A stretch of 58,242 bases of DNA, the filler included, from Platydemus manokwari (Eukaryota), in the NCBI GenBank assembly GCA_037951405.1. It is 5 parts of 5 records of this genome, joined end to end, with 100 filler letters (N's around TTAATTAATTAA, not from the genome) between each part and the next. Parts side by side here need not be neighbours in the genome. Positions count along the whole stretch, not along the records: positions 1 to 9,379 come from JBBMOY011257097.1; 4 more parts are not named here. One strand, written 5' to 3'. Position 1 is the first letter of the stretch. Each line of letters begins with the position of its first letter. Shown here piece after piece: positions 1 through 9,379 of the stretch. The position numbers and the translations under genes were made by a program. The notes beneath the pieces were generated by a model, which was not told the DNA's origin, ran no database searches, and worked only from the letters and a program-made list of their open reading frames with translations.

Positions 1-48
<48 letters not shown>

Positions 49-92
49 GATAATAATAATAATAATAATAATAATAACGATAATAATCATAA
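1..92. repeat. (AAT)n microsatellite
   Basis: Direct AAT tandem repeat with occasional AAC/GAT interruptions. Confidence 0.95.
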
Positions 93-799
93 TCAATCAA
101 ACAAAATAAATAAAGTATTTTATAAAACATGTATCAATCGATTCTCATATCAGAGTATAATTTATAATCGATAGATATTATCAATAATAGATGCCAATAA
201 TAATTGTTGTAATCCACAAAAACCCACAAAATAATGCATTAAGATATAATTTAGAAAAAAAACATTTCCTAGATCCAAATAAATAAAATGGTAAAAGATT
301 CTCAATGATTTATCTCACAAATGACGACAACTAATGGATAATTAGATCAATGATGTAATCGTTTGAAATTTTCGAAAGATATAACAACGACAATTTCAAT
401 CATTGTTGTTGTCTATTTATTACTAATCGAGATCAATCGGGAAAATAAATTACAAATAAAATTCATAAATTTACAACTCAACATAAGCAATCCGGACAGA
501 CGAAAGAACAATATGTATGTTTTTATTAAATCGAGCAATGTCACTAATGGAAAACTCATTTCATATGAAAACGATTTGTATTGATAAATTGCCATGGAGA
601 ACTTTATATTTTATCAACAAAACCCACCAATAATTATTATTTTGACAATATGGAGCACAATCTTAAATGATATTCCATCAATACAATAATATATAATTAT
701 AATTAATAACTCACAACAATGCAATTAATAATATAAAATTATTTTGAGAAAATATATTTTATTTCATTTTATCTGATAAAATTTCACAGAAATGGTGAG

Positions 800-910: not shown

Positions 911-2309
911 TTTAATTATTTTAAAAAATATGTTATATTTAATACGATATTACCCCACATGATATCGTATTATAAATTATAAATTTATATTGTTTTATTT
1001 TCTCAATAAATATTCCATTTAAACAAATACCAAATAAAAATCAGCAAGAACACTATTACAACGTTTGAAATAAAATTTCGATGAAAATGTTTCGAAAAAA
1101 CAATATTTTAATTATATTTGGTTTGATATGAAAAATTTGGTGAACCAAAATTGTGTGTTAGTGAAAACACTTCCAATAAAAAATGCCAGAATTCATCAGA
1201 TATATAAGGAAAAAATTGATCTTCACAAATGATGTAGTCTCATTCCAATTTCTAAATAATGGTCGAAAATCAATTCTGTGGAATATTGAAACCAATTAAC
1301 CTGAAATAAAAATGGCTAATGAGATTTATATGTTTCACACATCATTAATCTAAGTTACCAGCCAAATGTTCTAACAACATTTTTGTGTTGATCGACAAAT
1401 GTTTTCACTTCAACTGGCCTCATATTTTCGAGCAAATGAGAAAGTGTTATTTTTTAAAATTATCGTTAAAAAATATAGATGTCGATAATACGATAATTGA
1501 CGTTTCTCAGAGTTTGCTGGAGGATATTTTAGTTAATAAAATATTTTCTTCATCGAATTAGGCCAGACGAATTTCTTTTAACGCTTTGAGGTTGATAAAC
1601 ATTCTTATCAAACCTAGAAATCTTTGAATTTCAAATTAAATATTGTGTAATTTATTTATTTATTTACGAATAGTGAACATGTTACTTAAATACTATTTTA
1701 ACAAACTGACGGGCACTTGCGTTTATAACCGTCAAAGCAAAGTTCACTATGTGGCATGACGGCAATTGCCGTCTAAAACGAAACGGTCCTTTTTGGACAA
1801 TGCGGCTATAGCGGCACAAATGTGCTTTTACCGGCGTACAAATAGAAGACTAGTGTCATGTTTTGGAAACAATTCTTTTGGTTGACTTTTGATTTCCACC
1901 TATTACACGACTTGCAGCTTAAGTATGCACATATAGTGTTAAATTTCGAACTTCATTTGTTCCTACTGCCTCTAAATTTGTAACTATTGTGCTTTTCTCT
2001 TATAAGCCGTTGTGGTGCAGTATGAAAACCGAGTATTTCAAACACAAAGAAAAGATAGTAGCAATTTGATTTCAATTTTGTCACATCAAATGCCATCCAA
2101 TCTTGAATTTCATTTTTTTGTTACTAAAACAATAAAAATTGCATTCTCAAAACCGATATTTAAACAAAGTTTATGACACTGAGCCAGTACTTTGTTCTCA
2201 GTAAGATATTTTTGTGCCCTGATGTTTTCCCTTGTGTGCGCAGACATTTTACAACTGTGCGACCTTGTTTTCTCTCACGCGCACAGATTACAGGAAACAT
2301 TGACTGTAA

Positions 2310-2462
2310 GTCGCTACGATTTTATAAAGCACACATTGGAAGCGAAATGAAAAGTCATGACATCAAATTATAATTTAATTGTAATTATTCAAACAAACTA
2401 ATATTTTATAAGAACTTGATTTTAAATTATTTCAAATTTCAATGCATTATTAATCTTCACAT
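2310..2462 (+). repeat. Dispersed repeat copy B
   Basis: gctacgattttataaagcacacatt...aaaagtcatgacatcaaattat...tttcaaatttcaatgcattat aligns by eye with 37416-37568. Confidence 0.7.
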
Positions 2463-5400: not shown

Positions 5401-6727
5401 CCAATTAGCTTCTGATATTTAAAAATGGAATATTCATTTTCATACAAAAATAAAAATTCCGTTTAATTTTTCAGAGAAACTTATTCAATATTCCTTAAAT
5501 TTAACGTAGTTAATTTCTTAATTTAAAATTTACTTGTTTATATACATAGAAATTAATTAACTTATAAATTGAAAATATTTGAGTTTAAAATCGAAATTTA
5601 AACTTGTAAAAATTAGTTGATTAAATTAGTATTACATTGAAATGAAACATTGTTAAATATTTTTATAAACACAAAAAAAATTTTTAAATGTAATAACAAT
5701 ATAAAAATTAAAGAAATTCCTTTACTTAAAATAAACTTTGAAAAAATTAAACATCATTTTAAGAAGTCACATCTCAGGATTAGAGCTCATTATAAAAAGT
5801 GATTTATATGACGATTATATTTCACGTAAATTATTTTAAAAGAATGATTTTCATTGTTTAATCTTAATTAATAGTAATAATTCTGAAAAATAGGAAATCA
5901 GAGGAGACAGTATCAAACAGTCTCTGCTTTGAATCTGTGATGATTGTATGAACAATAGTACCTTATAATTGAATTTTCTATTTCTATTTTTCCAAAGGTT
6001 ACTCATTTAAAAACGAAATTTGAAAATTCATTTTTAATTTAAATCATCACTTACTTAAAGACTTATTTTATTCGTAGAGTTCTTGGAATCTTGAGATTTG
6101 ATTTAAGATTTTCAAAAATATTTAAATTAATATTTACTGAATCGATTGTAATTATCCAATAAAAACTTAATTCCAATGGTGTTTTTTGTTGAATTCATTT
6201 ATTGGAAATATTTCGTTAGAAGATTTGGATCACTTTTGAAGGCAATTAAATCATAAAATTTAGTTGGCAAATTCAGATTTTACGCCAAATTAATTCAATT
6301 ACCAGTGGTTATGAAAAGCCACGACTGGGAAATTGAAAACAATTAAAAAGTCAAACCAAAACCATTTTTGAAATATTTTTTTAATTTATTAAAATTATAA
6401 AAACATTAGAATTTTATCTGTTATTAAGGATTTCTTGATTTTTAACCCAGAATATGGATAAAAAGTTTAATATAAAATTGAAACAATTCGTTGTGAAAGT
6501 CAAGGAGAAATAGAAAAATCAATCTGGCATGTAATAGCTTAAATTGAACTTGTTATTTATATAAATTTTTTGAGCATTCTATATTATAACGTCATAAAAA
6601 ACTGAGCGAGGAGTAAGATCTATTTTTCCTAATTATTAAGCCTTACTAAAATCTTAAATGAAATCAATTTTTTCTTGCAGATATCGGTTAATAAAAGTAA
6701 TACTTTTTTTAAAGTTTGGTTGTCAAA

Positions 6728-6850
6728 ATTGCACGCATTGAAAATTAATTAAAAAGTCACGACACAAAATTTTACTTAACCAAATTACTTAAACAAATTA
6801 TTATGTTTTAATATTAAGTATGAATTAAATCTTTAAAATTTTAATTCATT
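6728..6850 (+). repeat. Dispersed repeat copy C
   Basis: gcacgcattgaaaattaattaaaaagtcacgacacaaaatt matches the family core. Confidence 0.6.
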
Positions 6851-7375
6851 TTAAAAACCTTACAATAATAACAATACTAATAAAAATAATAATGATGATG
6901 ATGATAATAATAATAATAATAATAATTTATAGTTATTTCATTTTTTAATGTAGAACAGTATAAAATCTTAATTTTAAAATACTAATTACACGAGCACATA
7001 CTATGCGATGACATTTATATGACCAATTTTGTTACAAATGTTTGTATCTACCTAAATAGTTCTTCATTAGCTCAACACGACTTACCGATATGGGATTTTT
7101 ACCTTTCAGAGAAAGTTTAAGGTTACCACGACTTTCCTAAAGCACATATATTCTTGAATAAATTATTAAATGCGGTATTACTCGAGATATGTAATGAAAT
7201 AGGTTGATTTAAAATTAATTTATTTCAGTATTAAGGAAAAAAAATATCTCAATATATCTCAAACATATTAAATATTTATTTGTTCTCATGAAATCGACCA
7301 TATTACAGTTCATTTGTAATTATAATTTATTTGAGAGTATATTTTTTTATGAATTTCATATTTAGGTTTTTAACA

Positions 7376-7642
7376 ATGTCACTGCTGGTATTTATCTTTA
7401 TTTTGAGTGCTTCTGTCATTTTGAATGTAACATCGGAATCTGGTCAGGGTAATTGATTTCCGGTTATTTTAAGTTTGAAATATATTTTAGCAGACGACAG
7501 GAATGCCATAAGGAATCTGATCGATGAAAATAATTTATTGAAAGCCATGATAATGAGAAATGACATCGATAATGACATTTACTTTCAAAGACGAATGGAC
7601 AAAAGAATGAAACCTCACATGCCTTTTCATTTTGGCCGATGA
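7376..7642 (+). CDS. Neuropeptide prohormone, 74 aa, exons 7376-7448 and 7491-7642; predicted mature peptide MKPHMPFHF-amide
   Basis: Spliced translation MSLLVFIFILSASVILNVTSESGQADDRNAIRNLIDENNLLKAMIMRNDIDNDIYFQRRMDKRMKPHMPFHFGR*. Hydrophobic signal peptide, acidic spacer, KR convertase site, C-terminal GR amidation signal; 42-bp GT-AG intron in phase 1. Confidence 0.9.
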
Positions 7643-8292
7643 ATACGGATTCGGTCTTGTTTGGAACTCATATAATTAATGTGATTGTTCTCGCTATATA
7701 ATATTTTTAAATATCAGTTGATATCGTTGTTTTATTGGTTTATATTTAATCNNNNNNNNNNNNNNNNNNNNNNNNNNNNNNNNNNNNNNNNNNNNNNNNN
7801 NNNNNNNNNNNNNNNNNNNNNNNNNNNNNNNNNNNNNNNNNNNNNNNNNNNNNNNNNNNNNNNNNNNNNNNNNNNNNNNNNNNNNNNNNNNNNNNNNNNN
7901 NNNNNNNNNNNNNNNNNNNNNNNNNNNNNNNNNNNNNNNNNNNNAAAGCTTTTCTATGCTTCTCTATGATTTAAATTTCATAAAATTCTTGTGGTTTATT
8001 TTATTGGTTTGTGTGTCTGTAATAAGCTTAGGAAGTAATTCCACTTTGCTTTGTCCAGGTCACAATGATCCGGTGGTGCGGATTGAATTGTGTTAAATAA
8101 TGTGTCATTTTTAGAGAATAGCTAAGTTGAATGGCTCATTAAAACAATGTTGATCAATAACGATTAATGAAACACTAATGAATTCTTATTAAGTAGAAAA
8201 AGTATGAAAGAATTAACTATGAAAACAGTTTATTTTCTAATGAGAAAATTCCTCAATGTAATGAAATTGGGGAGAAAAACACAGTAAAACGC

Positions 8293-8699
8293 CTAATAGA
8301 GACGTGATAACCAATAAGTTGGATGAATGGAAAATGTGATTCGAAATGACAATGACAACAACCAAAAAGAATTACTGAATTCGTCGCAAGAATTGGCCAA
8401 TAAATTGCTATTAATATTAAAGTTTAGACTGTTGGATACTCCAAGGTCGCTTGATCCGTTGAGCATGCATTTTTTGATCTGACGCGGTTGTTGTGAGATC
8501 ATATTGATGACAGGCCGACTTGACTGATATGAACCAGCCATGTGATTATTACCATTGTTTGTCAATGTAGTTGATGGTACATTATGAATCGTTGTTGAAC
8601 CTACAACATCATCTTTGGAATTTATTGTTATTAATGGTGGTGTGGCTTTACAGTCGATTGTTGGCCAATTTGATGGATGCATCACTTCCCGCTCAATTT
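8293..8699 (-). CDS. Terminal coding exon of a minus-strand gene (S/T/N-rich stalk plus hydrophobic, GPI-like tail); upstream exons not found
   Basis: 130-aa ORF extends upstream to a tttaag acceptor at 8701-8700, giving (E)IEREVMHPSNWPT...; more GC-rich than flanks; ends SFWLLSLSFRITFSIHPTYWLSRLY*. Confidence 0.55.
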
Positions 8700-9311
8700 C
8701 TTAAAGGTATAAAACAATTATTAAATAAATCACCTATAGCGATAAAATTATCAACATACACCCACATGGACATTAAATGTTGGAAAAATCATTGAAAAAT
8801 TCCATTCATCAAATTCGATTTCTGATTATAGGTGGCAAAATAAAAAAAAACAAACGAAAACATTTTATCAATTCTTTCCCCATTCTCTATTTGAAATCCG
8901 ATATTTACATCAATGAAAATCACATTCGATATCAGGTTCAACATTTTTACATCAACAACAATAAAATGGTTGACAACAAAATATGGTTATTGTGATTTGT
9001 CGTAAATAAATTTCATTTCTAGATCAAGTAATACCAGTAATCTTACATCGAAAATAAGGAGTTGAAACAAATTATAGGAATCATTGGGATGCCAAATGAG
9101 TTCAGCCGTAAATGATGAATTATATGGAGATTCTGTCGAGTCGCCTATATTTTATCAAGTTGTCGAAAGAGATAAAGATTTCGAAACATCTTTGTTAAGA
9201 AAGTAATTCAGCAACAATAGCATTGAATAAAATTTGATAAACAGGACTACCCAAAAACATAGAAAATATTTCTTCCATGTATTGCTTAAGTGGTATCAAA
9301 TATAAGTAATT

Positions 9312-9379
9312 TATTATTATTATTATTATTATTATTGTTATTATTATTATTATTATTGTTGTTATTATTATTACTATTA
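9312..9379. repeat. (ATT)n microsatellite abutting an assembly gap
   Basis: Direct tandem repeat. Confidence 0.9.

What the first reader, a model, noticed from the sequence alone, without database searches (positions are those of the whole stretch)
7376..7642. Hidden neuropeptide precursor encoding an HF-amide peptide (MKPHMPFHFa)
Absent from the ORF track because both exons are short, yet it has textbook prohormone grammar: signal peptide, acidic spacer, RR and KR sites, and a single C-terminal peptide with Gly-Arg amidation signal. The PFHF-amide end looks like an RFamide (PxRFa) with His replacing Arg. I do not recognise it among described flatworm peptides, so it may define an uncharacterised peptide-GPCR system. 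Novelty and family assignment are inference. A NAGNAG acceptor (tagcag, 7488-7493) could vary the spacer by one residue.
Basis: partly seen in the sequence, partly recalled or inferred. Interest (0 to 1): 0.8.

Follow-up and report, generated by a model that had tools for sequence, protein, structure and literature searches.

The report
Candidate orphan HF-amide prohormone gene
A small two-exon reading frame has every sequence hallmark of a neuropeptide precursor ending in one amidated peptide (MKPHMPFHF-amide), but no RNA, relative or peptide data could be reached to show it is a real gene, so it remains a good unproven candidate.

Summary
ATG 7376, exon 1 7376-7448, a 42-nt GT-AG intron, and exon 2 7491-7642 give a 74-aa product. 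It has a hydrophobic leader, a 33-aa acidic spacer, RR-MD-KR, MKPHMPFHF, then Gly-Arg-stop. The NAGNAG acceptor is also there.

In about 235 Mb of Markov-simulated sequence, loosely similar patterns arise at about 0.5 per Mb. None in 119 Mb had splice sites as good as these. The exons are GC-richer (0.36-0.37) than the intron and upstream flank (about 0.2). They match a neighbouring exon that is conserved in a related species.

The gene is not confirmed. The only public run holding the locus is genomic DNA. No homologue appears in two very large protein collections, which barely sample this lineage. No flatworm peptide with this ending and a retrievable sequence was found; a polyclad "XHFamide" is only named.

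I put about 0.5 on a real prohormone gene and about 0.3 on a chance pattern. If real, it is a new orphan member of a known kind, closest in form to flatworm xFRF-amide peptides with His in place of Arg. The flatworm origin could not be verified.

The parts
7349..7351 (+). Alternative in-frame upstream ATG; it would add MNFIFRFLT and give a 22-aa leader with an Arg in the n-region and a possible SAS|V cleavage site
   Evidence: the Kozak context is weak (T at -3). Whether it is inside the transcript is unknown.
7376..7448 (+). Exon 1: start codon with A at -3, hydrophobic signal-peptide-like leader, and the first base of the Ala codon
   Evidence: passes the hydrophobic-core test; GC 0.37 against 0.19 in the 150 nt upstream.
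7449..7490 (+). 42-nt GT-AG intron (GTAATT ... TATATTTTAG), GC 0.21
   Evidence: The donor GTAATT is identical to the donor of the conserved neighbouring exon. Splicing itself has not been observed.
7488..7493 (+). NAGNAG tandem acceptor (tagcag); using the second AG would drop the Ala residue
7491..7642 (+). Exon 2: acidic spacer, RR and KR sites, terminal peptide, Gly-Arg and the TGA stop
   Evidence: GC 0.355.
7607..7633 (+). Predicted mature peptide MKPHMPFHF, amidated from Gly 7634-7636 after removal of Arg 7637-7639; predicted [M+H]+ 1170.570
   Evidence: Processing is inferred from the established rules for prohormone convertases, carboxypeptidase E and the amidating enzyme PAM.
8376..8699 (-). 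Neighbouring gene, not part of the candidate: a coding exon conserved at 88% amino-acid identity in a related species. Used here as a control for coding GC, for splice-site style and for database coverage.

Best explanation
A small, single-copy, two-exon gene encodes a 74-aa (or 83-aa) secretory prohormone. By inference, the leader directs it into the secretory pathway. Prohormone convertases cut after RR and KR. A carboxypeptidase removes the final Arg. The amidating enzyme then converts the exposed Gly into a C-terminal amide, releasing one nine-residue peptide, MKPHMPFHF-amide. That peptide would act on a G-protein-coupled receptor or a peptide-gated channel. In form it is closest to flatworm xFRF-amide / YIRF-amide peptides, with His in place of Arg. 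Shown here: the sequence grammar, its rarity under null models, and a coding-like base composition. Inferred: transcription, splicing, processing, and neuronal or endocrine function.
For: 1. The grammar is complete at the stated coordinates.
2. It is the only locus in the window that passes a formal scan for leader, at most one short intron, and dibasic-peptide-G-basic-stop.
3. In 119 Mb of order-3 Markov sequence, none of 65 loose hits had an intron of 70 nt or less with a consensus-like donor and acceptor, as this locus has.
4. CDS GC is 0.36 and GC3 is 0.405. This exceeds all 28 chance hits under the whole-window null (means 0.276 and 0.288).
5. The exon/intron/exon GC pattern is 0.37/0.21/0.355. 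It mirrors the verified neighbouring exon at 0.38.
6. The donor GTAATT is the same as that of the conserved neighbouring exon.
7. The locus is single copy at the depth of its surroundings, so it is not a repeat.
8. The architecture matches validated planarian prohormones, which are short and end in ...FRYG...TRFG or ...GYGR (Collins 2010, supplementary file 6).
Against: There is no transcript evidence. The only run holding the locus is unspliced genomic DNA.

No homologue was found. The searches were a word search, an exhaustive phmmer of 1.84 billion representatives, a mixed-frame search and a metagenome scan. These blanks are weak, because even the conserved neighbouring exon has a single relative in 5.8 billion proteins.

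Loose look-alikes arise at about 0.5 per Mb. The first stage read very many windows with a flexible idea of prohormone grammar.

Under a GC-richer null, 2 of 23 chance hits match the candidate's GC and GC3. No canonical AATAAA lies in the 109 nt before the assembly gap. No trained signal-peptide predictor was available.
Confidence: 0.5

Rival explanations
1. Chance pattern. A stop-free stretch in a locally GC-richer patch of AT-rich non-coding DNA happens to end in KR-x9-GR-stop. It also happens to lie downstream of one of the many hydrophobic ATG-initiated frames, with usable GT and AG dinucleotides between them. There is no gene.
For: Signal-peptide-like ATGs are common here, 13 of 318. A 61-codon open frame is not unusual in this window, which has about a dozen of 60 codons or more. 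Loose-grammar loci arise at 0.4-0.7 per Mb in simulations, so hundreds are expected in a genome of several hundred Mb. The antisense strand is open as well. There is no RNA and no homologue.
Against: None of 65 simulated loose hits in 119 Mb reached this locus's splice quality. None of 28 hits under the whole-window null reached its GC or GC3. The AT-rich intron sits exactly between two GC-richer exons. The tail motif is unique in the window.
Confidence: 0.3
2. A real gene for a small secreted protein or peptide that is not a neuropeptide, for example a gland, epidermal or antimicrobial product. The dibasic sites and terminal Gly-Arg are either not used or used outside the nervous system.
For: All the evidence for a real gene applies equally here. 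Nothing in the sequence specifies the cell type.
Against: The combination of an acidic spacer, two dibasic sites and Gly-basic directly before the stop is what validated planarian prohormones show. It is not typical of generic secreted proteins. There are no cysteines to form a folded domain.
Confidence: 0.12
3. The GC-richer patch is coding on the other strand. The 67-codon antisense frame 7466-7666 would be a terminal exon of the minus-strand gene whose conserved exon lies at 8376-8699.
For: An AG at 7668-7667 puts that frame in the phase left open by the neighbouring exon.
Against: The acceptor is GAG, which has a disfavoured G at -3, and its pyrimidine tract is poor at 7 of 12. The product is Cys/His/Phe-rich and unlike the neighbouring exon. 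A better-looking, phase-compatible terminal exon exists at 8028-8134. Phase compatibility alone is a one-in-three event.
Confidence: 0.05

Closest known systems
Planarian FMRFamide-like prohormones Smed-npp-4 and Smed-npp-3 (Collins et al. 2010, PMC2953531, supplementary file 6)
   Same: They are short precursors with an uncharged hydrophobic leader, acidic spacers and KR-flanked short peptides. The last peptide runs to Gly at the very end of the protein. The peptide core is aromatic-basic-aromatic-amide (xFRF-amide, FRY-amide, TRF-amide), compared with FHF-amide here.
   Different: Those precursors carry two to five peptide copies with Arg at the penultimate position. This candidate has one copy, with His. 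No sequence similarity was detectable, and no HFG motif occurs in any of the 51 S. mediterranea prohormones.
Smed-npp-8 (same source)
   Same: The precursor ends ...G-R-stop, the same amidation and trimming signal at the extreme C-terminus.
   Different: The peptide family is unrelated (SGY-amide) and has three copies.
Arg-to-His variants of FMRFamide-like peptides in arthropods: Drosophila FMHF-amide; Ixodes YLHF-, ILHF-, IMHF- and MLHF-amide; spider and scorpion MIHF-amide (review PMC12035899)
   Same: They are HF-amide C-termini derived from RF-amide. The Drosophila FMHF-amide still activates the FMRFamide receptor.
   Different: They come from a different phylum. The variants sit inside multi-copy precursors of a recognised family, whereas this candidate is a single-copy orphan. 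The shared feature may be convergent.
XHFamide proneuropeptide of the polyclad flatworm Prostheceraeus crozieri (Piovani et al. 2023, PMC10396302; cited in PMC13551398)
   Same: It is a flatworm neuropeptide precursor named for an HF-amide ending, expressed in GnRH-positive larval neurons.
   Different: Its sequence is not in the held text or supplement, so neither homology nor copy number could be compared.

Membership tests
Neuropeptide / peptide-hormone precursor (regulated secretory pathway) | N-terminal signal peptide | tested here: met
   A hydrophobic core of at least 10 uncharged residues with mean Kyte-Doolittle score of 2.2 or more starts within the first 8 residues. Small residues (SAS, SES) are available for cleavage. 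This is a heuristic only; no trained predictor was available.
Neuropeptide / peptide-hormone precursor (regulated secretory pathway) | Peptide flanked by dibasic convertase sites | tested here: met
   RR at 7589-7594 and KR at 7601-7606 lie directly before the peptide.
Neuropeptide / peptide-hormone precursor (regulated secretory pathway) | C-terminal Gly as amide donor, followed by a basic residue or the end of the protein | tested here: met
   GGC CGA TGA at 7634-7642.
Neuropeptide / peptide-hormone precursor (regulated secretory pathway) | Transcribed and spliced as predicted | not testable with these tools
   The only run holding the locus is genomic DNA, collinear through the intron.
Neuropeptide / peptide-hormone precursor (regulated secretory pathway) | Peptide and its processing sites conserved in related species | tested here: inconclusive
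   Four searches found no relative. The lineage is almost absent from these collections: the conserved neighbouring exon has one relative only, an ORF call on a 966-nt genomic contig.
Neuropeptide / peptide-hormone precursor (regulated secretory pathway) | Mature peptide detected biochemically; expression in neurons or endocrine cells | not testable with these tools
   This needs LC-MS/MS and in situ or single-cell data.
FMRFamide-like peptides (FLP / RF-amide) | C-terminal Arg-Phe-amide | tested here: not met
   The C-terminus is His-Phe-Gly, giving HF-amide. His variants occur within true FLP precursors in arthropods, but always beside RF-amide copies.
FMRFamide-like peptides (FLP / RF-amide) | Precursor homology to known FLP precursors | tested here: not met
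   There was no Pfam hit and no hit in the protein collections.
FMRFamide-like peptides (FLP / RF-amide) | Activates an FLP receptor | not testable with these tools
   This needs a receptor assay.
The 51 catalogued Schmidtea mediterranea prohormones (Collins 2010) | Same or similar terminal peptide | tested here: not met
   PFHF, FHFG, HFGR, HFGK, HFG and KRMK are all absent from the 8 held supplementary files, which contain the precursor sequences. FHF occurs only inside ilp-1.
Polyclad XHFamide proneuropeptide | Sequence similarity of peptide and precursor | not testable with these tools
   The sequence table S1 of PMC10396302 is not held.

The most novel reading that the evidence does not exclude
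The locus is a real, lineage-restricted neuropeptide gene. Its single product, MKPHMPFHF-amide, is a stand-alone HF-amide descended from flatworm xFRF-amide peptides, or related to the polyclad XHFamide. It signals through its own, still orphan, receptor. That would be a peptide-receptor pair not yet described in flatworms.
Probability: 0.3. Interest if true: 0.45.

Novelty: new member of a known kind. Interest (0 to 1): 0.35.

Why it matters
Short neuropeptide genes are routinely missed by gene callers. Flatworm peptide repertoires are known to be incompletely sampled (PMC13551398). If real, this would add one orphan amidated peptide to the repertoire. It would also give a concrete ligand for receptor deorphanisation, and a case of Arg-to-His drift at the position that defines RF-amides. 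It would not change how peptide signalling is understood, because lineage-specific orphan prohormones are expected in flatworms.

The main practical lesson is about method. In a genome this AT-rich, a hydrophobic leader carries almost no information. The weight lies in the terminal dibasic-peptide-Gly-basic-stop motif together with good splice sites.

Tried and rejected
1. RNA evidence. The look-up of sequencing runs found a single holder, and read laying showed it to be genomic contigs at about 9x depth, collinear through the intron.
2. Homology. Searches tried:
   - a word search of exon 2
   - Pfam
   - an exhaustive phmmer against 1.84 billion representatives
   - a word search with an artificial alignment of all four open frames over the locus, meant to catch an ORF call in any frame on a relative's contig
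   - a back-translated scan of JGI metagenomes
   All were blank.
3. Atlas look-alike search: the machine was busy twice.
4. Organism identity. There were no tRNA or Rfam hits and no Pfam domain in ten other open frames. The accession of the relative's run is not mentioned in any held paper. I therefore cannot confirm that this is a flatworm.
5. Paralogues in the window: none by tblastn.
6. Codon usage against the neighbouring exon: too few codons to discriminate.
7. Literature strings. PFHF with neuropeptide gave 0 papers. HF-NH2 with neuropeptide gave 0. HFamide gave 8 papers, none with a matching flatworm sequence.
8. Antisense-exon reading: considered and judged unlikely because of its GAG acceptor.

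Full report
**What is in the sequence**

- An ATG at 7376 has A at -3. It opens a frame encoding a strongly hydrophobic 24-residue leader.
- After one further base the frame meets G|GTAATT at 7448|7449.
- Forty-two bases later an AT-rich tract ends in ttttag|cag (7488-7493).
- Splicing 7448 to 7491 keeps the frame and gives a 74-aa product.
- After the leader the product has a 33-aa spacer with 7 acidic and 4 basic residues (pI 4.3). Then come RR, Met-Asp, KR, the nonapeptide MKPHMPFHF, Gly, Arg and TGA at 7640-7642.
- The tandem acceptor would allow an isoform lacking one Ala.
That gives a more textbook leader with a charged n-region, a hydrophobic core and SAS. Without a transcript I cannot say which start is used.

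**Is it more than chance?**

I wrote the grammar as a formal scan with four requirements:
- an ATG with an uncharged hydrophobic core near the N-terminus
- no intron, or one GT-AG intron of 35-120 nt
- a product of 50-130 aa
- a tail of dibasic, 5-20 residues, Gly, one or two basic residues, then stop

Results in the real 9.4-kb piece:
- Only this locus passes.
- The leader carries little information, because 13 of 318 ATGs in the piece pass the leader test. This is expected where Phe, Ile and Leu codons abound.
- The tail motif occurs exactly once in all six frames.

Results in simulated sequence:
- Order-3 Markov sequence trained on the whole piece gave 23 loci in 60.6 Mb and 28 in 59 Mb.
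- A GC-richer model, trained on the richest parts including the candidate itself, gave 42 in 58.6 Mb and 23 in 57 Mb.
- That is about 0.5 loose look-alikes per Mb. This is negligible for one window (about 0.005). It still means hundreds across a genome of several hundred Mb, and the first stage read very many windows.
- The candidate is better than the loose class. None of the 65 simulated hits in 119 Mb had an intron of 70 nt or less with a GTAA-type donor, a pyrimidine at -3 and a pyrimidine-rich tract, as this locus has.
- None of 28 hits under the whole-window null reached its coding GC (0.36 against 0.276 ± 0.035) or its third-position GC (0.405 against 0.288 ± 0.047). Under the deliberately generous GC-rich null, 2 of 23 did.

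**Composition and context**
- GC is 0.37 in exon 1, 0.21 in the intron and 0.355 in exon 2. It is 0.19 in the 150 nt upstream and 0.26 downstream.
- An independent yardstick for coding sequence in this genome lies 730 nt away on the other strand. That exon, at 8376-8699, is 86.7% identical in DNA and 88% in protein to a 966-nt genomic contig of another, GC-richer species (Logan SRR33002330). Its flanks do not align at all.
- That exon has GC 0.38 and third-position GC 0.35. Its donor is GTAATT, the same hexamer as the candidate's donor.
- The candidate locus is single copy at the depth of its surroundings, unlike the AT-rich repeat at about 6724-6860.

**What could not be obtained**
- Only one public run holds the locus. 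Its contigs run straight through the intron at about 9x depth, so it is genomic DNA and probably the source of the assembly. Both reads tools are limited to one call each.
- No homologue was found by four routes: the word search, exhaustive phmmer against 1.84 billion representatives, a search with all four open frames at the locus, and a metagenome scan.
- These blanks carry little weight. The demonstrably conserved neighbouring exon has exactly one relative among 5.8 billion proteins, and that is a prokaryote-style ORF call on a short genomic contig. The window's own 130-aa frame is not in the collection at all. A 30-55-aa frame from the relative would very probably never have been called.
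- I could not identify the organism. The 42-nt intron, AT richness and precursor style are compatible with it.

**Rival readings**
- The main rival is a chance pattern in a locally GC-richer patch.
- I also examined the other strand. The 67-codon antisense frame 7466-7666 happens to be in the phase left open by the neighbouring exon. However, its acceptor is GAG with a poor pyrimidine tract. A better phase-compatible terminal exon exists at 8028-8134. The two genes more probably converge tail to tail around the assembly gap at 7752-7944.
- A third possibility is a real small secreted product that is not neuronal.

**Comparison with what is known**
- The architecture matches biochemically validated planarian prohormones. 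Smed-npp-3, -4 and -8 are 85-110 aa. They have uncharged hydrophobic leaders and acidic spacers, and a final peptide that runs to ...TRFG...FRYG or ...GYGR at the end of the protein (Collins et al. 2010, supplementary file 6).
- The peptide core Phe-His-Phe-amide resembles the Phe-Arg-Phe-amide of npp-4, with His for Arg.
- That substitution is documented inside arthropod FMRFamide-like precursors. Drosophila FMHF-amide still activates the receptor, and Ixodes, spiders and scorpions have xxHF-amides (PMC12035899).
- It is not a member of the RF-amide family by the defining test, since it has no Arg-Phe-amide and no precursor homology.
- None of the 51 S. mediterranea precursors contains HFG.
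- The only flatworm HF-amide I found is the XHFamide precursor named in Prostheceraeus crozieri larvae.

**Verdict**
It lacks expression, conservation and peptide evidence.
- I put about 0.5 on a real prohormone gene yielding the predicted amidated peptide. I put about 0.12 on some other real secreted product, about 0.3 on chance and about 0.05 on the antisense-exon reading.
- If real, it is a new orphan member of a familiar class, of moderate interest to flatworm neurobiology.

Noticed in passing
window 8376-8699 (-), and L001 502-826: A 324-nt coding exon (acceptor ttaag|AA, donor TTCA|GTAATT) is 88% identical in protein to an ORF on Logan contig SRR33002330_91501, and its flanks do not align. 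It is Ser/Asn/Thr-rich and has no Pfam domain. That contig is its only relative in 5.8 billion proteins, so it belongs to an orphan gene of a poorly sampled lineage.
   Followed up: partly
window 8028-8134 (-): This is a possible terminal exon of the same minus-strand gene. It has a TAG acceptor in the correct phase, 35 codons, then a stop. The patch around 8040-8100 is GC-richer. If real, the two genes converge across the assembly gap.
   Followed up: no
window 7466-7666 (-): A 67-codon open frame lies antisense to exon 2. It is Cys/His/Phe-rich and phase-compatible with the neighbouring exon, but it sits behind a GAG acceptor.
   Followed up: partly
window ~6724-6860: A short AT-rich stretch has very high summed contig depth in the DNA run (570-2566 against about 9-10 around it), with many contigs ending there. 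It appears to be a high-copy dispersed repeat or low-complexity element.
   Followed up: no
window 1-100, 6880-6930, 9300-9379: Trinucleotide microsatellites (AAT/ATT and ATG/ATA runs) give poly-Asn or poly-Ile pseudo-frames.
   Followed up: no
window 1685-2370: This patch is GC-richer (0.34-0.42) and has overlapping open frames of 45-69 codons in several frames on both strands. It has no Pfam match. It may be a degraded mobile element or non-coding.
   Followed up: partly
window 7360-7366: The sequence atttag|g, 10 nt upstream of ATG 7376, could be a 3' splice or trans-splice acceptor. If used, it would exclude ATG 7349 from the mRNA.
   Followed up: no
window 7010: The DNA run's contig reads T where the window has G. 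This is a single difference, either an allele or an error.
   Followed up: no
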